A DNA stretch of 64,000 nt from Girardia tigrina (lineage: Eukaryota), in contig MQRK01254984.1 of assembly GCA_001938485.1 (NCBI GenBank), forward strand, positions 1 to 64,000. Reading direction: 5' to 3'. The position numbers and the translations under genes are program-made. This document shows positions 4,778 to 53,375 of the stretch, one piece after another. Positions within the stretch are counted from its first letter, which is position 1, and the number at the start of each line of letters is the position of its first letter. The notes beneath the pieces were generated by a model. That model was not told where the DNA came from, searched no databases, and saw only the letters and a program-made list of their open reading frames with translations.

Positions 4778-6421
4778 ATGTCGAAATTTCAAGCCTTAAC
4801 AACATACGAAGAAGGTCTAAAAACGCTCGTGGATCTGTGTGAACATTGTTTCGGTCCCAATGGAAGACCGGTATTCATTGAATCGAACGATGGAAAAATA
4901 AAACCGACGAAAAATTCTTTCGACATTTTCCAATATATCTATTCCCATTCGGAAAACCCTTTGGTGAAAGTGACAGTCAATTTCGCTCTGGAACAACACC
5001 GAGAACACGGCGACCACACGTTTTATATCGTTATTTTGGCACTGAATATCTACCGGAAGTTGAAACAAGAAAACATTTGTATGTCGATGGCGCGAGAGAA
5101 ACTGAAAGAAATCGAACATATCATCGAAAATCAAATCGGAAATCGTAACAGATTCCATCGAAATTTCGAAAATAATTTCGAAAATCTCGTTCAATTGTCA
5201 ATGAGTTTAATTCGACCGAAGCTATTCGGATATTCCCAATCGAAATTGGAGTCGTTTTGTCGATTTGTTGTGGCTGCGATTTTGCAGTCGATTCCCGATC
5301 CGAGTAACGTCAGTTTGTCGTCGTGGTTCATGCCGACCGTTCTTTCGTTTCCGATTATCGGAAACGATCCATTTAAGTATGGAGAGATTTTTGAGGGGAT
5401 TTTGTTTCCGATTAATCTGAAAAGTAAAGTCAAAAACTACCTCCAGCGGGTTATCGAGTTGAGAAGTTTCACGACTTATGAGTTGTTGTATAAGGAGAAA
5501 AAGAATCTCAACTCGATACTCATGATTTACGACAACTCGAAAATCTGTGAAAGTATTCACGAGCAAATGGAAATCAACAAGCAACATCGTTTGCCGAGTG
5601 TAAAGCAAATCATCGTTGATGTTTTCGAAGCCAATTTTATAGGGTTATTGGAAAAATCCAATGTCGGATTGATAATTGTAGAAAATCAAATGAATGGGAA
5701 TCTAAGATCGAAATTGTCGGATAGGAGTATATTTCTTTTAGATGGTGTTGATCGGAATTCAATAAATCGGGCAAGTAAAATTTTTAATGTGGAAATTGTG
5801 ACGTCTTTGAAAATCGAAGACACAGAATCTTTTGTGTTTCAAGTCGAAATTCCGAGCTTGAGAACCTTTCAAAGTAAACAGTACCTAGCGATTCCTAAAC
5901 CGGAAATTATCACGCTTATTTTCCATAAATTACTCGATTCTAATTCTAATCTTAATGAGGATTTATCAAATTTTTTATTTAAAAGTCTTAGTAAAGTAAT
6001 TTTTGACAATAATTCTGAAGGGTTGACGAGTCTTTGTCATGGAGCTGGTTGTACGGAATTTTTAATTGCCGGAGTAATATTAAGAACCGGAGAAAATGAT
6101 ATCGTTTCTTCTAATTTTTTGATGCCAACAGCAAACTATAATCACAGCATTATACAAACGGCAATATCAGATTCTTTTATTAAAATTTGGCAGTTAACGA
6201 AAGATCCTTGTAATGAACATAACATATGTAAAAGATCCGACGACTTGTTGACAATGTGTCAAAATAACTTTAATTGCGTTTGTAGTCATTTGAAACATGG
6301 TACGAACTCACGTAACGTCCCGTCAGATTTTACGCTTACAAAACTTGCTGCGATTAAAAACGCTTTAAGATTGGTAAATGTTTTACTTAGTACTGATTTA
6401 GTTATTTTAACACAACATTAA
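4778..6421 (+). CDS. MKKS: McKusick-Kaufman/Bardet-Biedl syndrome 6 chaperonin-like protein, single-exon 547-aa ORF
   Basis: Group II chaperonin-like N-terminus CFGPNGR and degenerate GDGTT (GDHTF). Matches recalled from human MKKS: AAILQSIP~RAFLLTIP, FQSKQY~FGSKHF, GAGCTE~GGGCTE, CVC~CGC, C-terminal KLAAIKNALRLVNVLL~KLSGLQVAVETANLIL. Confidence 0.85.
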   Translation: MSKFQALTTYEEGLKTLVDLCEHCFGPNGRPVFIESNDGKIKPTKNSFDIFQYIYSHSENPLVKVTVNFALEQHREHGDHTFYIVILALNIYRKLKQENICMSMAREKLKEIEHIIENQIGNRNRFHRNFENNFENLVQLSMSLIRPKLFGYSQSKLESFCRFVVAAILQSIPDPSNVSLSSWFMPTVLSFPIIGNDPFKYGEIFEGILFPINLKSKVKNYLQRVIELRSFTTYELLYKEKKNLNSILMIYDNSKICESIHEQMEINKQHRLPSVKQIIVDVFEANFIGLLEKSNVGLIIVENQMNGNLRSKLSDRSIFLLDGVDRNSINRASKIFNVEIVTSLKIEDTESFVFQVEIPSLRTFQSKQYLAIPKPEIITLIFHKLLDSNSNLNEDLSNFLFKSLSKVIFDNNSEGLTSLCHGAGCTEFLIAGVILRTGENDIVSSNFLMPTANYNHSIIQTAISDSFIKIWQLTKDPCNEHNICKRSDDLLTMCQNNFNCVCSHLKHGTNSRNVPSDFTLTKLAAIKNALRLVNVLLSTDLVILTQH

Positions 6422-22640: not shown

Positions 22641-23330
22641 TTAGTTTATTAACACTATCTACAGATTTAAAGAAAAACTGATTTAAATTTGTAGAAAGTG
22701 TTAATAAACTAATTTCCTTGTCTAAACAAAAAAGGTTATTCCAAATCTTTCCCTGATGAATTAAAAAAGGAAACAATGGATAAGATATTTTTGTAAGATA
22801 TTATTTTCTCCTGACGGTTCTAAGAAAGAAATCAAAGTATCATAAAGTATGAATAAGTTGAAATATTACTTAATTACATCTTATTCAGAAGGATTTAAAA
22901 ACTTTTACAATGCCTTGTTGAAAGCAACTAACAATGAATTCAATTTAAAAATTATATCATGATCTCATAAAATTTAAAAAATATTCAGTAATATATCTAA
23001 TTCACCTTTAACACTTTGTTCTGATATTATGTATGAAAAGGAATGCAATTAGTGCGATGCCACTTATATTGGAAACTATCCGTCTTCTGTGTAAACGAAT
23101 TCAAGAACATGGTCGAAAAAGTGAGTGAAAGTAATATTGCAGTACATTGGAAAACATTTAACTGTGATATTGTTAGTTTGTCAAGTATGAAATTTGTAAG
23201 AATGCCTACAATAAATTCAAAAAGGTATAATTTGACAATGACATAACATTTTGTTGTTCAGTGTTTTTGGATGATTGCTACATATCTTGGCTATTGAACT
23301 CAACAAAAAAGATTAATTAAAATTGTTGAT
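22641..23330 (+). mobile_element. Penelope-like element remnant (RT C-terminus/GIY-YIG) with 5' foldback
   Basis: Homologous to 50500-51120; C.ATYIG and KRIQEH motifs; ~31-bp inverted arms 22641-22671 / 22682-22712. Confidence 0.7.
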
Positions 23331-28576: not shown

Positions 28577-31500
28577 CATTCAGCTCCGCATTAGTGGATA
28601 CCGCTTTAGTGGATAATCCGCTATAGTGAATAGAGAGTCTTCGGTCCCGTTTTTTGTTATTGATATCAATGGTAAACAAGTCCGGTTTAGCGAATACCGG
28701 GTAAGAGGATAATTCACTTTAATGAATAATTCTCTACAGTACAAACGCCATTGGCCTCATTATTAAATTACTCCGCTTTAGTGAATAGTGTCAGTACATT
28801 GGCAAAATTTTATTGCCTATGATAGTCACACATCCTACTCTCTCATACACACAGAGACACAGTGACGAATTTAATCTCTTCACCTCTTGTTAACAGTTTC
28901 AGTGGCTTGCAGTAAAACTGCAAATATATGCCAAAATTAAATTAAAAATAATTTTCACAAAATTCATTCGCTCAATACAATTCAATTATGGATAAGAAAA
29001 AAGTTAAAGTGTTGACACTGCAGCAAAACGTTGAAATTATTAAGTAAAAAGAAACAGGCGGCAATAGCTAAGAAATATGATATAGGACAAGCTGTAATAT
29101 CTAGAATAGCTAGTAACAAGTATAAGCTTCTAACTGATTTGCAAAATAATACAAATCCGAACATGAAACGAAAACGTGCTGCACATGCGGCAGACATAGA
29201 AAATGCATTGTTGCATTGGTTCAGTCATGCATCAAGTAGACAGGTGCCAATAAGTGGACAAATTCTCAAATCAAAAGCAGAGGAGATTGCAAAGGAGCTT
29301 GGAATCAATGACTTCATAGCATCAACAGGGTGGTTAGAACGATGGAAACATCGCAACAACATCAACTTTAAGAAACAGCATGGTGAGAAACAGGATGCGG
29401 ATAACTGGAGTGCCGAACGATGGATCACCGATGTGCTTCCAGATCTGCTGAAAGATGTTGATCCATGCAATGTGTTCAATGCTGATGAAACCGGGCTATA
29501 CTGGAAAGGTCTTCCAGATAGAACATTAGCGTTCATGAATTCATATGTGTCCGGTGCTAAGATCGGCAAAGAGAGATTCACTATTCTTCTTGCTGCGAAC
29601 AGGGATGGATCAGAAAAGTAAGAGCCGTTTGAATTCGGTAAGAGTCAGAATCCATGTATTTCAAAAATGTTAAGAACTTGCAAGTTATGTATGAAGCCAA
29701 CCGCAATGTTTGGATGGTGTCTGAACTGTGGAATATGTGGTTACTGAAGGTTAATAGTTCGATGAAACTCCTAAATTGAAACATTCTGTTATTCTGCGAC
29801 AACTGTGAATCTCACAAAATCGATGTTAAGCTAACAAATATTAAACTAACCATCCTGCCACCAAATACAACGTCGTTGATTCAATATTGTAATGATTGAT
29901 TCTATATTGTAATCATTGCGAACTTCAAAAGGCCCGACAAGTCGCTCATGCTTCGTCAACTCATGAATGGGCATTCGACACACAAGACCCCGCCGAAGGG
30001 TAGCCCGTTGCCATGGCAACAGTTCCGGTTACCATAGCAACGGTCGCGGTTACTGTAGCCTAGGCAGCAACGGTTCCTGTTCACTTGGTGACGGTAACCA
30101 TGGTCTTAGTTATCATAGCAACGGTAACCAAGGAACGTTTTTCATTGGCAACGGATACAGTGATTCAAGGCGGTTGTAACCATGTAACGGTTACCGTATC
30201 CATAGCAACCGTGACCCTATCACTAAGGACCGTAGAAAAAGTGCTAATCGATCACTGCACAGTGCCCAGATGTGCTAATCGATACTTTAAAAGTGCTAAT
30301 CGATAGTGCACATAGTGCTGCACATTTCTAATGTGATAGCACAGTGCTTTTCAAGCTGCACATGTGTAAAAGTGCAAAAATCAATACATAACATTTTTTA
30401 AAGTGCTAGTGTCAAAAATCGATATCATGTGTTTGATGCACATTTTGATTCTCTATTTGAATGTGCAATTAGAAATTTAATATATTGATTACTTTTTCCT
30501 ATAATAAGCATAATGTGCAAATTTGCACAAGATGCACAAGGAAGCAGAATATAAAAAAGTGCTGATGCACTTGAATAGTAACCTATATACGTAAATTCAG
30601 ATTCCACATCATCATTTTCGAAAAAGTGCTGATTAATCGATTTTTTCAAACATTTCTGAAATTCTCAAAAAAGTGCTTAAAATCGATTTTTTCGTATATA
30701 TATGAAACCCATGTATTATATTATGTTGTTTACCATGTGTGTTGTTTACGGTCTTGTGTGTCGAATGCCAATTTTTCCCCTACTTATCAGTAATCGATAC
30801 TACCAACGAAGGTTCTGCAGCTCAGATAGCACTAAAGCAATCTCTTCTTGATGCGCTACACATTGTCAAACAAGGATGGAACAGGATTGAAACAACAACG
30901 ATTGCGAACTGTTTTCGACGCGCGAGCTTTGTGAAAGAGAGGCCGGTCGATGCAAATTCAGACATAACACTCGATGAGACTATCATTTACAAACCGGATG
31001 ATATGAATATGGACGAGTTCGTTAGTTATGTTTCTTTGGACAATGGTGTTGCGACAGAAAGTGATGAATTTAACGCACGTGACTCGATTAGTCTAACGGA
31101 TACTACAAATGTTGCACAGTCTGATGACGTTGATGACTATGAACCAGCAACCGTTTGCGCACCACCAACGCTGTCAATGACTCTGCAGGTCATTGATGTC
31201 ATTCGGAAATTTCTGGAAGCAAGGGGCTGCAAAACTATGATGATGTGTATCAGATGCAGAATAAAGTTAACGAGCTCGGACAGAAAACTTCAAAGCAAAG
31301 TTCTATTCTGGACTACTTCAAGAAACATTAATAAACTTGTTCCTACATTTCACTGTGGACTACAACTGTTCTATTCAAATTTATTGCATTGTTGTGTGTT
31401 TATGTACATATGTGTACATGTACATGTACTGTATATGGGTTCAAAAATACAGATAAAAAATACATATGAAGTAAAAAAAGAAAATATATAAAAATAAAAA

Positions 31501-31701
31501 AAAACAAAAATACATGTGCCTCCTTTGTCTGCAGTATCCTCGTCACAGGAGGTGGGAACAGCATTAAGCTAGCTAATAGCATACAATGCACATGAACATG
31601 TATACAAATGTGTAAATGTTAAAGTCCGCCATAATGGATAGTCCACTTTAGTGGATAATTTTAATTAGTCCACAGGCTATCTACTAAAGCGGAGCCGACT
31701 G
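28577..31701 (+). mobile_element. pogo/Tigger (TIGD4/6-like) transposon, degenerate
   Basis: TIR CAGTCGGCTCCGCTTTAGTRGATA-like at both ends, TA TSD; CENP-B HTH (FIASTGWLERWKHR) and FNADETGLYW (29031-29621); C-terminal fragment 30786-31330. Confidence 0.93.
29969..30780. mobile_element. Non-autonomous TIR element nested in Tigger, with internal GTTACCATAGCAACG-like and AGTGC repeats
   Basis: Perfect 20-bp IR GGCATTCGACACACAAGACC (29970-29989) / GGTCTTGTGTGTCGAATGCC (30750-30769). Confidence 0.8.
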
Positions 31702-31896
31702 TATATCAAATGTTGATTATCAAACGATGTCGTGTTTTTTAGAATTATTTAAGTGTTACAACCACTTTAATATTCTATATTTGTAAAATGGTCTCTGTTA
31801 CAAAATAATTTTATTCTTAATAATTAAATTTTACCAGAGGCAAATGCAAGAAATAATCCCTGAGGGAAGAGTGATTTCATTTAAAAAGTAAATAAA

Positions 31897-31939
31897 TTGA
31901 TAATATATTTCAGCGGTTTAACCGTCATCATCAGATCAC
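31897..31939 (-). ncRNA. Minimal hammerhead ribozyme in inverted pLTR (partly mutated)
   Basis: GTGAT-CTGATGA-TGACGG-TTAAA-CCGCT-GAAA-TATATT-ATCAA. Confidence 0.7.
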
Positions 31940-32116
31940 TGATTATGTTCTTTTTTATTGCTTTTATATAAGAAATGAATAGTTACGTAATCAGTTACGT
32001 AAGTCTAATCGAAAACTCATAACAAATTAGTTGAGAGTGCTGTTTGAACATTGATTTTTGGATCACATGATCTTATCAACAATTGATATTAACTAAGAAT
32101 TGATATTATCTAAGAA

Positions 32117-32503
32117 CATGGCCGTTCTTAGTTGGTGGAGCGGTTTGTCTGGTTAATTCCGATAACGAATAAGACTATGACCTACTAAATAGTGTGATTG
32201 TGTTTAATCGCAATTACATAACTTCTTAGAGGAATTAATAACGTTTAGCTAAATGAAATGGAGCAATAACAGGTCTGTGATGCCCTTAGATGTCCGGGGC
32301 CACATGTGCGCTACAATCACGGTAACAGCTAGTTTTATTCCTAGCTAGAAATGGCCGGGCAACCTGCTGAAACACTGTCGTGTCAGGAATAGTGGATTGA
32401 AATTATCCCACTTGAACGAGGAATTCCTATTAAATACAAATCACTAACTTGTGCTGATTACGTCACTGCCCTTTGTACATACCACCCTTCGCTACTACCG
32501 ATT
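32117..32503 (+). rRNA. 18S rRNA 3'-region fragment (pseudogene, ~390 nt)
   Basis: CATGGCCGTTCTTAGTTGGTGGAGC, GTTAATTCCGATAACGAA, GCAATAACAGGTCTGTGATGCCCTTAGATG, CTGCCCTTTGTACA..CGCTACTACCGATT; substitutions at normally invariant sites. Confidence 0.97.
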
Positions 32504-33089
32504 ACAGGAAACTATAGAATTATGTTGTGAACTTTGGCCTAAGAATAATCTGGACAATTCTGATTTATATGAAGTTGCTTTTCGAAAACTCTTAACAATT
32601 GCTACTTCAAATGTCCATTTTCTATTTAATGATGAATGGTACAAACAAATAGATTGGATTGCAATGGGTTCACCATTGGCTCCAACGTTAGCCTCTATAT
32701 TTCTTTCTTCCATTGAAGAAAAAATAGAATTGTTTTTGGGGAAAAAGTCACTACTTTATAAAAGATATGTGATGATATCTTTCTAGTCTTTGACTCTCGA
32801 TAAAATGTTTTTCCTTTTCTAGATTAGATGAATTCAATTCATCCAAATATAATCTTTACAGTAGAACAGGTGTTGTATCTCAGCAGAGGGTTTTTTTGGT
32901 TTCTTTACCAACTTTCAACTCGAGAGGTTCAATCGGAATCGACGGGAAAGGATATTCGAGTGCTTCTTTTACTAGTTCAAGTTGAGACTGCAAAATGCCC
33001 GAGACTGAATACTTGCCGCGAACGGGAACGGCCAGCGATTTGATCAGTGGCTTCAATGACGTATCGCTCATGATAAAGCACATATGAAG

Positions 33090-33895
33090 TTCGTTGTCGT
33101 ATCGAATTGAGATAGCGGTCACGGGTTCCGTGTGACCGTGGAGATCTAACACTCGCTGTGTCAGGTCAGTCGGTAGATAAGTGCTAACTTTATTGTCCAG
33201 GAAACCGATCACCAATAATCGATTGTCTGAAGTAATAGAGAGACAACTGATCCCATGATTAAAATGAGGTATTGATGAGTTGTTTAACGTGCTGCAAGAC
33301 AATTCCATCTGATCCTTTGAAGCATTGTTTGACGTATATTTCATCGACCAAATTTTGATTGATTTATGGGTACTAGCAGATATCATTGATATTTTATCGG
33401 AACTTAATACAAGAGAAGTTATCGAATCTTGATGATGTTTAATCGATTGGATTAACGTTCCTTCTTTCAAACTGTACATATACATCCATCCATTCTTAAA
33501 TCCAATAACTGCAAATCGATCACCCGGTAATAATAATCCACAATGTGCCAATCAGTTTTTGTTTTTCATCAACTCCATTGACCTTTTTATTCTTATTCTC
33601 TGAACACCATTCGACTGTTGAAGACGGTTTGAAGACCGATTTAATCTATAACTTTGCCTCTGATAACGACACTGTAAAAAGACCATCTCTATCTGACGTG
33701 AACTGGCAGTAGATTATGGCAGATCGATGCCCCAGACCGGCAATATGTTCTTTAGTCGTCATCTCTTTACAGGAAGGGAGGTCGAGAGAAAATATAGCCA
33801 CAGTATTGTTTTTCATTGAACAAAGCAATTCTACTGTTTCATGAGGTATAGATTTGGTGCGGACTGAAACACTTTTACAACCGGAAGGAATTTCG
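33090..33895 (-). pseudogene. WDR3: Intronless internal fragment of WDR3/UTP12 (SSU processome WD40 protein)
   Basis: NNTVAIFSL, GHRSAI, LPGDRFAVIG, KSIKIW, LDNKVSTY, LHGHTEPVTAISI match human WDR3 NNLVELYSL, GHRSDV, VPGDRQVVIG, KSVKFW, LDCTVKIF, LYGHKLPVICMDI; stop and frameshift near 33550-33650. Confidence 0.85.
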
Positions 33896-34641
33896 ATATG
33901 ATCAAAGGTTTGTTATATCGCTCTTGGTCTCTTTCTTCTACATTTTCAAAATATATTAAAAGTATTGATACAATGAGCAAATTATTGAATAATAATGGTT
34001 ACTCTAAGTCCATCATAGACAGATTCACTCGTGAGACTGCAGATAACATAAATGAAAAAGACAAAATCAATAATGAACAAATTAATAGTTTAAACAATGT
34101 AAACTGCTTTACGCATGGGTATACTTTAAGTTTACCTTACTCTGTGGGTTTTAAACACATCAAGAATTCGATCTTGAAATCAACAAATAATATTTTAAAT
34201 TAAAAAAAATTATTTCTCAATCATTTAAAGTTGAGAATATGTTTTGCAATAAATCAAATACTCCTTTAGGATTGTGTTCGGACATTGTTTATCAATACAC
34301 ATGTAATGGGTACAATGCTACATAAATCGGAGAGACTGCCCGTCATCTCTGCAAAAGAGTCCAAGAACACAGTGAAAAAGGTGGAAAGAGTAATATTGTT
34401 GAGCATAAAAAACTTGTAAATGTAATATTAGCATAAATGATTTTAAGATTTTGTGCAAGCATTTTAAAAATTATTGAGAGAGAGTGTGATGTGAAGCATT
34501 GTTGATAAGATCATGTGATCCGAAAATCAATGTTCAAAGAACACTCTCAACTAATTTGTCAAGAGTTTTCTATTAGACTTTTTCTAAGTGATTATATAAT
34601 CATTCATTCTTATATAAAAGCAATAAAAAAGAACATAATCA

Positions 34642-34684
34642 GTGATCTGATGATGACGGCTAAACTGTCGAAATATATCATCAC
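34642..34684 (+). ncRNA. Intact minimal type I hammerhead ribozyme (PLE pLTR)
   Basis: Stem I GTGAT/ATCAC, core CTGATGA, extra U, stem II GACGG/CTGTC, GAAA, palindromic stem III ATATAT, AUC cleavage site at 34679. Confidence 0.9.
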
Positions 34685-35940
34685 AAAATATATTTTTAAA
34701 TGGTGTTTATTTGTTTATAATAAAAAATTACCATCTTTTTTCAAGTTTAAATTGATAAAAAACAGAATTTTAGAAATCCTTCTCAACATAGTATCATTTT
34801 TTACATGGGTACCTACATGAAATTTACATTTGTTGCACTCATACTGTAAGTGCAAATTTTTGGGGCATTTTAGTTACAAAATAAAGCTATCTTAGGTAAA
34901 ATTTAAAATGAATGAGTGTCTCCTATTGATATAAAGATAATAAAAGAATGAAAATTCTGAGTAAAACTCAATTTCTTTTAAATAATTATTATTGTAAAAA
35001 TGACTCATTGAGTCATCAATCGAGAATCCGGTGTGTGTCTATTTCATTTTAGATCGATTAAATATGGCTAGCCAATCAGAGCAAGTAAGTGGCTTGAGAG
35101 AAATTGTCATTATTTTTACGATAATGAATTAATTCTTTTGGCACGATAAAGTTTATGAACTCGATTTGAATCTGATTGTTAAAGTCGTATGAATACTCGA
35201 TTTTGTGAAAGATTTTTGTGAAAAATATATTTTTTTGAATAAATTCGAATTTATTGAATAGCACATTTGTATGCTTTTAAATCTGTTCTTAATGAATTTA
35301 AAATTGAAAATTATTTAAAACGAATTTTTAAAGATTCAGAAATATAAAGGAAATTTATTTTGTAGGATCACTCTGAAGAAGAATGATAACAAATGGGCCC
35401 AGTACGACATACCCGAGTCTAAAAAAATTGACACTGCGTCTTTGATACCACCATCCGGTCTTTGTGGCAACTTGGGGATGAGGCGGAACACTAACTGTCA
35501 TTTAAATTGAATCTTTTTTTCACTTCTTCTGATTTTATCAGTAAAAGTCCTCTTCAACTTAGGTTGATACTGGGTTTATTTTTGATACAATATTTTTGAT
35601 TTATGACCTAACTATAATTTTCTCTTATGAGAAAATATTATTTTAAAAACACATTCAAATCAGCGCTTGGACATATTTTAGCAAAATTTATAATATTTAA
35701 TCGACATAATTGATTAAAAACATTTTAAAAACTTACCAGTTTAGAACTTGGACTTCTCCATGATTTGAGATTATATTAGACTGAACTAAATTTGGAATCT
35801 TTTTTTGTTCCATCAAATATTTTGAGTTATTTCTCATTAAATAAATGAATAAAGTTATCAGAATTTAGAAGCTCGATTTGTTTTTCTTTGTGACAGTCAC
35901 AGACTAGAGAACTTAATTTAATTAAAATATATGCCCGTTT

Positions 35941-44649: not shown

Positions 44650-44945
44650 TTATAAACGATTTGAAGAACACAGTCGAAAAAAGGGTAATAGTAATATTGC
44701 AGAATATATGAAAAATAATATTAATATTGAAAATTTAAAGATTCTGCCTTTTGATTGATATTTGGTGAGAGAGTATCATGCTAAATTTTGTTAAATATGT
44801 CAAATGGCAGTCCCAACAAGCTTATTCAGAAATTTTAAATAGCGTAATTTTTTACAATTGATCAAATACTCATTTTTGCATTTATTTACCGTCGAATTAA
44901 ATCATTAGTCAGTGATCTGAAGACAATGGCTCATCTTAAAAAATA
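44650..44945 (+). mobile_element. Penelope-like 3' remnant with decayed hammerhead
   Basis: KRFEEHSRKKGNSNIAE homologous to the other PLE copies; AGTCAGTGATCTGAAGA at ~44907-44923. Confidence 0.6.
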
Positions 44946-50012: not shown

Positions 50013-50349
50013 TAATTTTTAATATTTTAAAAGATTAAAATTTTAATTAATGTTAATTAAATTAAAATGGAAATAAATACTATTTTTAATTTAATTGAAA
50101 TTTTAAAAAAATAAAAATGGTTTGGTTTAAAAATAATTTTCAATATTTTAAATGATTATAATGATTGAAATTTTATAATTAAAATGGGAATAAATATTGT
50201 TTCATTAATCGAAAACTTGAAATAAGGTGGCCCAACAAATATTTAGCCTTTAAGATTAAAAAGGCATTAACTGTTCAGTAATACGATAATTCAATGCATG
50301 AATAAATAAAACTTAATTAATTTTCTATGAAAAACAAAACTCATCAATT

Positions 50350-51521
50350 GAAAAATATATTTGTTGACGATATATTTCGACGGTTCAACTGTCATCTTCA
50401 GGTAACTGATTAATAATTAATTCATCTGGTTATAAATACAAAAATGATGATTATTTAATCGATTGCATAAAATCATGCTAATCAAAAATTCTCAATAAGC
50501 TGGTTGAGACTGCCGATTGAACATTGATTTTAGGGCAACGCGATATAATTAATAATGCTTCACACGACACTCTCCAGATAAATGTAAAAATGATTACGCA
50601 GAATCTTGAAATCATGACATTTACATTTTTTCCTATGTTCTGCAATATTACTCTTCCTCTCTTTTCGACCATGTTCTTGAATTCGTTTACAGAGATGACG
50701 GGCAGTCTCTCCAATGTATGTTGCATCGCACCCATCACATTTTTATTCATAAATAATAGCAGAACAAAGTGCTAAAGGTGTAATAGATTTATTACTGAAC
50801 ATATTTTGAATTTATGAGATCGTGATACGATTTTTTAATTTAATTCATTGTTAGTTTCTTTTAACAATGTATTTTCAAAGTTTTTAAATCCTTCAGAATA
50901 AGGTACAATCCAGCAACATTTAGGAATATTATTAATATCTATTGATACTTCGATTTCCTTCTTAGATCAATCAGGAGAAATTAAACTCTGATTTTGCGGA
51001 CTATCTTTCAAAAGTATTTTATCCATTGTTTTCTTTATTAATTTTTCCAGAAAAAAATTAGAATAACCAATCTGATTCAACAAAGAACTTAGTTTATTAA
51101 CACATTCTACAGATTTAACAAAAGTGGAAGACAACGACCAGGAGCGATAAATAAGGCTTTTAATCATGTTTCTTTTATAATTCGGTTCACAAAAACTGTC
51201 CGGTAAAGTATATAAACCAATATCACTTTGCTTCCTATAAATTCAAGTCTCGTAACTAAGAGATTTTCTTTCAACCAAAAGATCCAGAAAAGTTAAGAAT
51301 CAATTCGTTTCATTTCAACTGTAAAAGTAACATTTAGATGTAAAGAATTCATAAAATTTAAAAATGGAAATACATCAGTCTGATTTTCTGTTCAATCGGT
51401 AGTCTTAACCAGCTTATTGAGAATTTTCGATTAGCATGATTTTATGCAATGGAGAACAAAATCATCATTTTTGTATTTTTATCCAGATGAATTAATTATT
51501 AATTAGTGACCTGAAGATGAC
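50350..51521 (-). mobile_element. 5'-truncated Penelope-like element with inverted 5' pLTR (continues 52164-52215)
   Basis: FMNSLHLNVTFTVE, MIKSLIYRSWSLSS and GIY-YIG remnants; 51400-51521 is an inverted copy of ~50390-50510. Confidence 0.88.
50363..50406 (-). ncRNA. Minimal hammerhead ribozyme, core intact
   Basis: GTTAC-CTGAAGA-T-GACAG-TTGAA-CCGTC-GAAA-TATATC-GTCAAC. Confidence 0.82.
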
Positions 51522-52163
51522 CGTAGCACGTTAAAACACCGAAAAAAACATCGAAAAATTATGAAAAAAAATCGAAAAAGATTTATTAGTAATAAATAAA
51601 ACCAGCCAATACCAAAATATATGCTTCTGGATTTCTATTGACTCGGTCTATTAAAAAAGCTATTGATTTTTCGTTAAAAGCCACATATTTCTTTTTTTTC
51701 TCATGGTTTCACCATTCGTCAACATAAGGAATTTTTGAAAACACGATCTTTCTTCAAATTTTACTTTCTGCATAAAATTTTTAAGTGTTGGATTCGAATT
51801 ACAATATATATTTCTGCATGAATTGTGCCATTCTTCAATGGCATAATTAGTTCTAGTAATATCATTAAAAAGACGGGTTCTTGCATGCCATAAATGCAAT
51901 GGAAAACTGATCCTACCTAAAATTTCATCAAGTTCCGTTCCCATATAATATTCGTGAAAATATGAGTAAATTTCTCCTTTTTAGATCCTCACAAGTTACT
52001 ATGCTTTTGGCGGATGTGTTCCGTTACTACTACCACGTATTCAGGACTCTAATACTCAATCTAATCGTTCCAATTTTATTATATGAGGAACCGAAGCTGC
52101 GTGGCTACATCATTTCATTTAATGTTTTATTAAAACTTTTTTTCGAAGTTTTAACGTGGTACC
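51522..52163 (-). mobile_element. Internally deleted MULE/Mutator element
   Basis: Imperfect TIRs CGTAGCACGTTAAAACACCGAAAAAA / TTTTTTCGAAGTTTTAACGTGGTACC; 9-bp TSD GAAGATGAC/CAAGATGAC; FPLHLW..RTNYAIEEWHN motif. Confidence 0.88.
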
Positions 52164-52409
52164 CAAGATGACGGTTGATTCGTCAAAATATATTGTCAAT
52201 AAATATATTTTTAAATGGATGAGTGTTGTTATTTAAAAATTATCAACTCGTAAAAAATATTAAAAAGGATTTTTATATTAAATTAAAATAAAGATGTTGT
52301 CGAACACGCGTTTAAAGTTAAATTTCTTCACTCTTCACGTTCTTAAACTGGTGGGGACCCATAACCGACTACACTCAATCGTTAATTTCAATGATGTTTC
52401 TGTCTCTAG

Positions 52410-52491: not shown

Positions 52492-52684
52492 GTTTCGATT
52501 ATCAAATTTCTGTTTGAATTTTACTTTTAAAATATTTTAAAAAACATTTATAAAATTATTAAATTAATAATTTTAAAAAAGAATAAATTATTTTTAAATA
52601 CTAATTAATTATCGTTAAATAATAAATATACAATAAATCAATTTCTATCGGATAATTTATATTAATAGAGGATTTTTCGATTGT

Positions 52685-53375
52685 TTATGAATTAATTTGT
52701 GATTATTTATGAATTAATTTGTGAATATTTATTAATTAATTTGTGATTATTTACGAATTAATTTGTGAATATTTATTAATTAATTTGTGATTATTTATGA
52801 ATTAATTTGTGATTATTTATGAATTAATTTGTGAATATTTATTAATTAATTTTTGGTTATTTATGAATTAATTTGTGAATATTTATTAATTAATTTGTGA
52901 TTATTTATCAATTAATTTGTGATTATTTATCAATTAATTTGTGATTATTTATTAATTAATTTGTGATTATTTATCAATTAATTTGTGATTATTTATTAAT
53001 TAATTTGTGATTATTTATGAATTAATTTGTGATTATTTATGAATTAATTTGTGATTATTTATGAATTAATTTGTGATTATTTTTAATTAATTTCTGAATA
53101 TTTATTAATTAATTTGTGATTATTTATGTATTAATTTGTGAATATTTATTAATTTATTAGTAAATATTTATTAATTAATTTGTAATTATTTATGAATTAA
53201 TTTGTGAATATTTATTAATTAATTTGTGATTATTTAATTATTAATTTGTGATTATTTATGTATTAATTTGTGAATATTTATTAATTTATTTGTAAATATT
53301 TATTAATTAATTTGTGATTATTTATGAATTAATTTATGATTATTTAATTATTAATTTGTGATTATTTTTTGATAT
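52685..53375. repeat. 22-bp minisatellite (GAATTAATTTGTGATTATTTAT)n
   Basis: Directly visible tandem array. Confidence 0.95.

What the first reader, a model, noticed from the sequence alone, without database searches (positions are those of the whole stretch)
31880..34700. Hammerhead-flanked Penelope element carrying host RNA cargo (18S rRNA, WDR3/UTP12, unknown piece)
Seen: the order is inverted pLTR+hammerhead, ~390 nt sense 18S rRNA, PLE RT (the rRNA is fused directly at CCGATT|ACAGGAA), ~220 nt unassigned, ~800 nt antisense intronless WDR3, rest of RT/GIY-YIG, pLTR+hammerhead. Comparison with the sister copy at 51167-51330 shows the cargo replaces ~150 nt of RT rather than simply inserting. 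Known: PLEs form inverted 5' pLTRs and retro-RTs can switch templates; WDR3/Utp12 is an 18S-processing factor. Inference: serial template jumping or RNA-templated patching produced a ribozyme-bounded cassette that could mobilise host RNA or yield antisense RNA against an 18S biogenesis gene. The rRNA/UTP12 pairing may be coincidence.
Basis: partly seen in the sequence, partly recalled or inferred. Interest (0 to 1): 0.82.

Follow-up and report, generated by a model that had tools for sequence, protein, structure and literature searches.

The report
Dead Penelope copy with rRNA/WDR3 retro-inserts
This is a dead, single-copy Penelope retrotransposon that holds an 18S rRNA fragment and a WDR3 mRNA fragment; both fragments belong to large dispersed families, so this is not a special cargo cassette, but the 18S family's fixed ends look like a genomic footprint of reverse transcription of mature ribosomal RNA.

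Summary
The pieces are an inverted pLTR (31878-32083), a 33-nt filler, sense 18S (32117-32503), PLE RT (32504-32870), 1,029 nt of antisense spliced WDR3 (32871-33899) replacing 141 nt of PLE, then the rest of RT/GIY-YIG and the 3' pLTR (to about 34750). The "unassigned 220 nt" is simply more WDR3.

The interpretation changes. Neither insert is private cargo.
- **18S piece:** it belongs to a dispersed class (1,257 first-look candidates). In 30 pieces mapped, 24 have 3' ends in a 13-nt hot spot (rDNA 1638-1650). Their 5' ends stop at or after 1174, one base 3' of the only U in the helix-31 loop, where m1acp3-pseudouridine blocks reverse transcriptases. This points to cDNA made from mature rRNA.
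- **WDR3 piece:** it is a 5'-truncated copy of a retroposon family (202 candidates) with a fixed 3' end. It is nested antisense, with a 141-bp target deletion.

Three junctions were searched and are unique in the genome, and no sister of the fourth was found, so the chimera shows no sign of amplification. The two hammerhead motifs lie on opposite strands, and the PLE ORF is broken. Other first-stage notes on this genome also flag rRNA fragments inside transposons. Read support could not be tested.

The parts
31878..32083 (-). Inverted, truncated copy of the PLE 3' end (pLTR). It carries a minimal hammerhead-like core on the minus strand (about 31897-31941) whose helix II is damaged.
   Evidence: Inverted repeats. 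Matches the 3' ends of sister copies at 90-95%. Motif found.
32084..32116 (.). 33-nt filler made of two imperfect copies of a 16-18-nt unit. No other locus in the genome has it.
   Evidence: Read directly from the sequence. All 39 other genome matches to 32030-32116 stop at 32083-32084.
32117..32503 (+). 18S rRNA fragment, rDNA positions 1256-1642 (3' major domain), in the same sense as the PLE. It is 94.3% identical to the majority consensus of the family.
   Evidence: Rfam RF01960. Mapped against L010 18S. Divergence.
32504..32870 (+). PLE reverse-transcriptase segment, 5'-truncated. It has a 1-nt deletion in the codons of the YVDD motif (about 32766-32776).
   Evidence: 94-95% identical to many copies. 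Sister copy L037 3851-4804 hits Pfam RVT_1. Frameshift seen by comparing.
32871..33899 (-). 5'-truncated copy of a WDR3-mRNA-derived retroposon family ('W'), antisense to the PLE. Its fixed family 3' end lies at 32871. A 4-nt microhomology (33896-33899) lies at its truncated 5' end.
   Evidence: Pfam PF25172. 202 genomic candidates with the same 3' end. Exon-by-exon match to the intron-bearing locus L038. Junctions.
33896..34497 (+). Remainder of the PLE ORF (RT C-terminal part and GIY-YIG nuclease), with an in-frame stop at 34323-34325 in the first GIY-YIG motif.
   Evidence: 91-93% identical to many copies. Sister copy L037 4844-5245 hits Pfam GIY-YIG. Stop seen by comparing.
34498..34750 (+). 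3' pLTR with a minimal hammerhead motif (about 34640-34684) and a 3' tail. Sister copies show the element ends near 34749-34761, not at 34700.
   Evidence: matches run to 34749-34761. Motif conserved in 14 copies.

Best explanation
The locus is a decayed, single-copy, 5'-truncated Penelope-like element with the usual inverted 5' pLTR. It contains two unrelated RNA-derived inserts, each a member of a genome-wide family. (1) The 18S piece is a cDNA of mature 18S rRNA. In this genome a reverse transcriptase repeatedly begins copying 18S in a narrow hot spot (rDNA 1638-1650, upper helix 44) and runs towards the 5' end. It almost never passes position 1174, the base next to the helix-31 loop uridine that carries the RT-blocking m1acp3-pseudouridine in other eukaryotes. 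At this locus the RT copying the PLE RNA most likely switched onto 18S rRNA at a 2-5-nt microhomology, copied 387 nt, and the product was joined to the converging inverted pLTR cDNA through a 33-nt filler. (2) Later, a 5'-truncated copy of a WDR3-mRNA-derived retroposon inserted in antisense orientation by target-primed reverse transcription from a nick at 32870/32871. Its 5' end was joined at a 4-nt microhomology and 141 bp of PLE were lost. Shown: the anatomy, the family memberships, the intron loss, the end distributions, and the lack of any sister copy of the junctions. Inferred: the template switch, the role of the rRNA modification, and the order of events.
For: 18S family: 1,257 first-look candidates, and all 40 scored matched. 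Of 30 pieces mapped, 24 have 3' ends at 1638-1650. The 5' ends of those 24 run from 1174 to 1269, except two at 946/950. Flanks are unrelated between loci. The majority consensus of the fragments equals the rDNA-like copies, so there is no master-copy signature, and divergence ranges from 0.5 to 5.7%. T1173 is the only U in the hairpin loop ACUCAAC in the Rfam structure. The acp modification in the helix-31 loop stops RT one base before it (PMC4872110). Direct repeats of 7-11 nt flank 3 of 22 pieces, against 0.5% in shuffled controls. The same architecture (inverted pLTR, 18S, sense PLE) occurs in L009 with a different PLE family. 18S lies inside or beside a PLE in L042, L048 and L047/L053, always with different 18S ends. 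W family: fixed 3' end, 5' ends from 63 to 1223, chimeric 5' partners, unrelated flanks. Introns of 63, 49, about 6,200 and 55 nt with GT..AG are absent. Three junctions are unique by direct search. The sister PLE has RVT_1 and GIY-YIG domains.
Against: No target-site duplication flanks the whole element or the 18S piece here. PLE adjacency among the sampled 18S pieces (about 4 of 23 other loci) is not clearly above what a PLE density of roughly 4% would give. Other first-stage notes report 18S pieces inside DNA transposons, so the 18S piece here could be a later solo insertion. The sample of 5' ends is biased towards pieces at least as long as the query. The presence of m1acp3-pseudouridine in this species is assumed from conservation. 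The reason for the 3' hot spot is unknown.
Confidence: 0.55

Rival explanations
1. Both inserts are later, independent insertions into an already integrated PLE inverted repeat. The 18S retro-fragment landed at the centre of the palindrome, either by trans TPRT or by capture of rRNA cDNA during repair of a break at the fragile inverted-repeat junction. The W copy inserted separately.
For: Solo 18S pieces with 7-11-nt direct repeats exist. An 18S piece sits inside another repeat, with about 35 nt replaced and a palindromic filler. In L042 an 18S piece sits inside a contiguous PLE with only 17 nt lost. Filler with a local duplication at 32084-32116 resembles end-joining repair. Unchecked notes s1-697877 and s1-694863 report 18S pieces inside a mariner and a MULE.
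Against: Two independent loci (the window and L009) have the 18S piece exactly between the inverted and sense PLE parts, a very small target. The 18S piece is in PLE sense orientation wherever PLE sequence follows it (window, L009, L042, L048).
Confidence: 0.3
2. One reading: one event of serial template jumps built the whole mosaic. It acts as a hammerhead-bounded cassette that can mobilise host RNA or produce antisense RNA against WDR3.
For: Both pieces are RNA-derived and lie inside one PLE. A PLE-sense transcript would be antisense to WDR3 over about 1 kb.
Against: The WDR3 piece is antisense, so a cDNA-strand template jump would not produce it. It carries the canonical 3' terminus of a roughly 200-copy family that is found without any PLE. 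No sister copy of the junctions was found. The hammerhead motifs are on opposite strands and the left one is damaged. The ORF is broken.
Confidence: 0.05
3. Assembly chimera: repeats from different loci were joined by the assembler.
For: All components are high-copy repeats in a fragmented assembly of 255,254 contigs. Read support is untested.
Against: The junctions fall at 0-4-nt microhomologies and at a unique filler, not inside shared repeats. The PLE parts on both sides of the WDR3 piece are collinear, with exactly 141 nt missing. Analogous structures occur on other contigs (L009, L042).
Confidence: 0.05

Closest known systems
LINE-1 chimeric retrocopies with small or ribosomal RNAs (U6, U3, 5S, 28S rRNA / L1), PMC13174262 and PMC4476161
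   Same: A sense-oriented fragment of an abundant non-coding RNA is fused to the 5' end of a 5'-truncated retroelement. Fragment boundaries recur. The origin is attributed to template switching or RNA ligation during target-primed reverse transcription.
   Different: Here the partner is a Penelope-like element, not L1. The RNA is 18S rather than 28S. The entry point is internal (143 nt from the 3' end). The class has hundreds to more than 1,000 candidates, against 18 loci for 28S/L1 in primates. The 5' limit coincides with a known RT-blocking rRNA modification, which that paper does not discuss.
Penelope-like elements with inverted pLTRs and captured host sequence in Adineta vaga, PMC3846280
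   Same: Inverted 5' pLTR, 5' truncation, microhomology-mediated 5' junctions, foreign sequence inside the element, and proposed template jumps.
   Different: In the rotifer, intron-containing host genes are framed by pLTRs with target-site duplications and are copied to new sites. Here the host pieces are spliced or rRNA-derived, belong to independent families, and the chimera was never copied.
Minimal hammerhead ribozymes of PLE pLTRs, PMC4209133
   Same: CUGAUGA core, a 5-6-bp helix II with a 5' bulged base, GAAA, and a short palindromic helix III in the pLTR. Pairs of motifs on opposite strands a few hundred bases apart are described as common.
   Different: Nothing unusual here. The left copy has a damaged helix II.
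Retrozymes (hammerhead-bounded non-autonomous retroelements), PMC4918200 and bioRxiv 10.64898/2026.07.22.740005
   Same: Non-coding cargo between hammerhead-bearing repeats.
   Different: Retrozymes need two ribozymes on the same strand to release a circularisable RNA. Here the two are inverted.
Tripartite chimeric retropseudogenes of Magnaporthe (double template jumps by a LINE RT), PMC2104539
   Same: Several cellular RNAs are fused head to tail in one retrocopy. The composite W subfamily (ThiF-like fragment, an unassigned stretch, then the WDR3 tail) resembles this.
   Different: The composite here went on to amplify as a family with its own 5' truncations.

Membership tests
Penelope-like element (EN+ PLE) | Single ORF with reverse transcriptase followed by a GIY-YIG endonuclease | tested here: met
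   Sister copy L037: RVT_1 2e-09 and GIY-YIG 6.2e-05, both above the Pfam cut-offs. The window copy is 91-95% identical to the family.
Penelope-like element (EN+ PLE) | pLTR terminal repeat, often with an inverted truncated copy at the 5' side | tested here: met
   Inverted arms. The same arrangement occurs in L015, L017, L026 and L037.
Penelope-like element (EN+ PLE) | Intact coding capacity (autonomous copy) | tested here: not met
   The copy is 5'-truncated at the RT, has a 1-nt deletion in the YVDD codons, a stop at 34323-34325, and 141 nt replaced.
Hammerhead ribozyme (PLE minimal type) | Conserved core CUGANGA ... GAAA with helix II | tested here: met
   Right copy about 34640-34684 has 5 bp in helix II. 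The motif is conserved in 14 family copies.
Hammerhead ribozyme (PLE minimal type) | Match to curated covariance models | tested here: not met
   No Rfam hammerhead family at E<=5 in 31500-35100. This is expected for minimal motifs lacking helix III (PMC4209133).
Hammerhead ribozyme (PLE minimal type) | Self-cleavage | not testable with these tools
   Needs an in vitro transcription and cleavage assay. Published PLE minimal motifs cleave only weakly, and as dimers.
Retrozyme / ribozyme-bounded cassette | Two ribozymes in direct orientation on one transcript | tested here: not met
   The left motif is on the minus strand and the right one on the plus strand.
Chimeric retrocopy by RT template switching (L1/U6 type) | Sense-oriented cellular RNA fused to the 5' end of a 5'-truncated retroelement | tested here: met
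   18S is in sense orientation and abuts PLE position L037 4055 with 2-nt overlap. A second case is L009.
Chimeric retrocopy by RT template switching (L1/U6 type) | One target-site duplication flanking the whole chimera | tested here: not met
   No repeat of 8 nt or more between 31820-31890 and 34700-34800. The inverted pLTR complicates the test.
Processed (spliced) retrocopy of WDR3 | Loss of parental introns | tested here: met
   Four GT..AG introns of locus L038 are absent. One further 757-nt gap is non-canonical.
Processed (spliced) retrocopy of WDR3 | Poly(A) tail and target-site duplication | tested here: not met
   The family ends at a fixed internal position with no A tail. Here the target lost 141 bp.
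WDR3/Utp12 protein | WDR3-specific beta-propeller profile | tested here: inconclusive
   PF25172 is by far the best hit (3.8e-28, against 1e-10 for other WD40 families), but at 99 bits it is below the 140-bit cut-off because only part of the domain is present.

The most novel reading that the evidence does not exclude
This genome records, in hundreds to more than a thousand insertions, a reverse transcriptase (probably a PLE's) copying mature cytoplasmic 18S rRNA. Copying starts at a fixed entry point in upper helix 44 and ends at the m1acp3-pseudouridine block in helix 31. The genomic fragment ends would then be a natural footprint of an rRNA modification, and of a defined 18S decay intermediate (the head-domain RNA) that serves as acceptor for template jumps or as a trans template for TPRT.
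Probability: 0.45. Interest if true: 0.65.

Novelty: new variant of a known kind. Interest (0 to 1): 0.45.

Why it matters
The locus itself is an ordinary decayed mosaic and should not be read as a host-RNA shuttle. Re-examining it exposes two genome-wide processes. First, there is a stereotyped class of 18S rRNA retro-fragments whose boundaries appear to be set by rRNA biology: an RT-blocking modification on one side and a fixed 3' entry site on the other. This extends the L1/ncRNA chimera phenomenon to an invertebrate rich in Penelope-like elements, at far higher copy number. It also offers a way to read rRNA modification status and RT behaviour from genomic DNA. Second, spliced mRNA fragments (WDR3, fused in one subfamily to a ThiF-like fragment) have become amplifying non-autonomous retroposons. 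Both families will confuse gene and rRNA annotation in this genome.

Tried and rejected
- **Master-copy SINE hypothesis for the 18S pieces.** Rejected: the fragments' majority consensus equals the rDNA-like copies, and the six differences from L010 are private to L010. The 3' ends also vary over about 9 nt.
- **Site-specific retrotransposon in 18S rDNA (R7/R8-like), to explain the fixed break.** Rejected: sequences after the break are unrelated between loci, and the 18S 5' ends also vary.
- **The last ~60 nt of the W family as a foreign retroelement tail.** Rejected: translation shows it is a diverged continuation of the parental WDR3 exon. The shared 9-nt string with the 18S hot spot looks coincidental.
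- **A shared 5' boundary among PLE copies.** This was an artefact of the query copy's own truncation.
- **Enrichment of PLEs next to 18S pieces.** About 4 of 23 other loci, not clearly above a rough 10% expectation, so it is not used as proof.
- **Organism.** Not identified. The AT-richness and 49-63-nt introns suggest a flatworm, but this is only a guess.
Full report
**1. Observation**

- Two inverted-repeat pairs bound it: 31881-31974/34607-34700 at 87% and 32001-32083/34498-34580 at 93%.
- Rfam's eukaryotic SSU model matches 32116-32281 and 32315-32417 at gathering threshold, and 31977-32537 in a local scan with E 7e-59.
- A full 18S gene from the same assembly (L010:1358-3142, minus strand, 1,785 nt, Rfam 1-1831) serves as the reference. 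Against it, the window piece is rDNA 1256-1642 = window 32117-32503 at 93% identity.
- PLE homology starts at 32502-32504 and runs to 32870. It resumes at 33896 and runs to about 34750.
- A better-preserved sister copy (L037 = G000:C223805) has an RVT_1 ORF and a GIY-YIG ORF, both above the Pfam cut-offs.
- In L037 and several other copies, 141 nt lie between the two window-matching blocks. In the window those 141 nt are replaced by 32871-33895.
- The minus-strand ORF 32880-33551 hits the WDR3 second-propeller profile at 3.8e-28.

**2. The "unassigned" 220 nt and the RNA origin of the WDR3 piece**

The whole stretch 32871-33899 aligns exon by exon to an intron-bearing locus on contig C224250 (L038).
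- Introns of 63, 49, about 6,200 and 55 nt have GT..AG ends and are absent from the window.
- One further 757-nt gap is flanked by a 5-nt direct repeat and lacks splice signals. It may be a later insertion in that parental copy.
- The last ~60 nt of the piece diverge from that contig at the DNA level. Translated, they are a diverged continuation of the same exon.
- So the insert is a single 1,029-nt spliced WDR3 cDNA segment, antisense to the PLE.

**3. Neither insert is private to this element**

*The 18S piece.* Searching the genome with it gave 1,257 first-look candidates, and all 40 scored candidates matched.
- I mapped 30 pieces (the window plus 29 fetched loci) against the full 18S.
- In 24 of them the 3' end lies at rDNA 1638-1650, spread over every position from 1638 to 1646.
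- The 5' ends of those 24 lie between 1174 and 1269, with two at 946/950.
- Six others run further 3': three to the true 3' end (1785), two to 1749/1756, and one to 1685.
- Flanks are unrelated from locus to locus.
- The fragments' majority consensus is identical to the rDNA-like copies. Individual divergence ranges from 0.5% to 5.7%, and the window piece is the oldest in the sample.
- This is a star-like pattern of repeated derivation from rRNA over time, not amplification of a master copy.

*The WDR3 piece.* Searching with it gave 202 candidates.
- Copies share one precise 3' end, at the equivalent of window 32871.
- Their 5' ends fall at many positions (reference positions 63, 156, 269, 574, 592, about 1070-1109, 1223).
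- Their flanks are unrelated.
- Fifteen sampled copies form a composite subfamily. The last 497 nt of the WDR3 unit are preceded by about 1 kb of other sequence that includes a ThiF-family (E1-like) fragment. This subfamily has 5' truncations of its own.
- A fixed 3' end with variable or chimeric 5' ends is the signature of a retroposon family. I call it W.

**4. What sets the 18S boundaries**

- In the Rfam consensus structure the hairpin loop reads ACUCAAC. In the local 18S its only uridine is T1173.
[quoted passage not shown] Its acp group blocks reverse transcriptase, giving a strong stop one base 3' of it. The group is added in the last cytoplasmic maturation step (PMC4872110).
- The longest common class of fragments begins at 1174, 1177, 1179 and 1180. 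Then nothing begins until 946/950.
- Counts per 20 nt decline only slowly across 1257 to 1174 (roughly 9, 6, 5, 5), so the cliff at 1173/1174 is not what limited processivity alone would give.
- I infer that the templates were mature, modified 18S rRNA.
- Caveats: the sample favours pieces at least as long as my query, and the modification is assumed for this species.
- The 3' hot spot lies in the 5' strand of upper helix 44, 143 nt from the 3' end. I have no tested explanation for it. A 3'-to-5' decay intermediate that retains the protein-bound head domain would fit the 9-nt spread of ends, but this is speculation.
- Two pieces start at 1749/1756. From memory, this is just upstream of where the two dimethyl-adenosines near the 3' end would lie.

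**5. How the 18S pieces get into DNA**

- Three of 22 testable pieces are flanked directly by 7-11-nt direct repeats (L044, L057, L054), against 0.5% in shuffled controls. Solo insertions with target-site duplications therefore occur.
- Some pieces sit inside other repeats with small target losses and filler. The L004 piece (re-fetched as L084) replaces about 35 nt of a repeat and carries a palindromic filler. L042 lies inside a PLE with 17 nt lost.
- Some are fused to spliced gene fragments. In L003 the downstream sequence matches other loci in two blocks that are about 50 nt apart there.
- PLE sequence adjoins the 18S piece in the window, L009, L042, L048 and L047/L053, always with different 18S ends, so these are independent events.
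- L009 repeats the window's architecture (inverted pLTR, short filler, 18S, sense PLE 3' end) in a PLE family only about 70-75% identical to the window's.
- PLE adjacency (about 4 of 23 other loci) is not clearly above a crude expectation from the roughly 4% PLE content of this window. I therefore treat the PLE RT as the likely agent, not a proven one.
- Other first-stage notes on this genome, which I did not check, report 18S pieces in a mariner and a MULE, a 28S piece in a Penelope GIY-YIG domain, and a ~400-nt insert with an 11-bp duplication.

**6. Reconstruction of this locus**

*The 18S junction.* The junction falls where PLE and 18S share a short microhomology, and BLAST alignments overlap by 2 nt.
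- The 18S piece is in PLE sense and lies exactly between the inverted pLTR and the 5'-truncated sense PLE.
- A 33-nt filler, made of two imperfect copies of a 16-18-nt unit, sits on its left.
- The simplest account has two converging cDNAs primed on PLE RNA 3' ends, the usual origin proposed for head-to-head PLE structures. The longer cDNA switched onto 18S rRNA before the ends were joined.
- The alternative is a later solo insertion at the palindrome centre. I give it about 0.3.

*The W junction.* The W copy is best explained as a later nested insertion.
- It is antisense.
- It carries the family's exact 3' terminus, abutting PLE base 32870 with 0-1 nt of overlap. That is where a nicked plus strand would prime the cDNA.
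- Its truncated 5' end joins the PLE through the 4-nt overlap 33896-33899.
- The PLE lost 141 bp. Target deletions and 5' microhomology are well known for LINE insertions (general knowledge; PMC3846280 reports microhomology-mediated 5' junctions for PLEs).

**7. Not a mobile or ribozyme-bounded cassette**

- Genome searches with junction-spanning queries found only the window itself across 32870/32871, 33899/33900 and 32083/32084. Every other hit stopped at the junction.
- I did not search the 18S|PLE junction directly. The sampled closest PLE copies either continue as PLE upstream or are truncated elsewhere, and none matches the window's 18S segment.
- The minimal hammerhead is conserved across 14 family copies: a CUGAUGA core, a 5-6-bp helix II with a bulged 5' base, GAAA, and a short palindromic helix III. 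It matches the type described for PLE pLTRs (PMC4209133).
- Rfam does not score it. The left copy lies on the opposite strand with a damaged helix II. Published motifs of this type need two copies on one strand to cleave.
- The ORF has a frameshift in the YVDD codons and a stop in the first GIY-YIG motif.

**8. Limits**

- Stretches of N in several loci were left as they are.

**9. Verdict**

The functional interpretation is not supported. The locus is an ordinary decayed mosaic. It does point to a genome-wide, stereotyped retro-insertion of 18S rRNA fragments whose limits appear to be set by rRNA modification and processing, and to a WDR3-derived retroposon family. That is a new variant of the known chimeric-retrocopy phenomenon.

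Noticed in passing
L080:57-1359 (= G000:C242675, minus strand); also L062-L077: A composite non-autonomous retroposon subfamily of about 1.5-1.7 kb. It consists of a ThiF-family (E1-like) fragment, an unassigned stretch, and the last 497 nt of the WDR3 unit read in one frame. Copies have variable 5' truncations and unrelated flanks.
   Followed up: partly
L038:1914-2671 (parental WDR3 locus, G000:C224250): A 757-nt interruption of the WDR3 coding sequence flanked by a 5-nt direct repeat, without GT..AG ends. It is possibly a transposon insertion into an exon of this copy, in which case this contig may not be the functional gene.
   Followed up: no
L044 (G000:C207493:2100-4100) and L057 (G000:C176619:6700-8700): Solo 18S fragments flanked directly by 10-nt and 11-nt direct repeats. 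These are clean target-site duplications, showing that 18S cDNA can integrate on its own.
   Followed up: partly
L003:700-1500 (minus strand): Directly after an 18S piece comes a sequence that matches several other loci in two blocks about 50 nt apart there. This looks like a spliced gene fragment fused to 18S.
   Followed up: partly
L084:85-606 (G000:C249634): An 18S piece inside a repeat family of about 334 candidates. It replaces about 35 nt and is preceded by a filler bounded by a 7-nt inverted repeat, a pattern typical of end-joining repair.
   Followed up: partly
window 50347-51375, also 22880-23170 and 44654-44714: Pieces of a second PLE family, 68-77% identical to the first. The one at about 50340-52200 has hammerhead-like motifs at both ends and about 600 nt of unrelated sequence before its right-hand motif.
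   Followed up: no
window 52680-53340: A long tandem array of an AT-rich unit of about 22 nt.
   Followed up: no
window 4778-6421 (+): An uninterrupted 547-aa ORF with a weak TCP-1/cpn60 chaperonin match (3.8e-13). It is unusually long and intron-free for this genome.
   Followed up: no
L010:1358-3142: This full-length 18S copy has six private differences from all other rDNA-like copies and from the fragment consensus over positions 1256-1642, so it may be a variant or decaying rDNA unit.
   Followed up: partly
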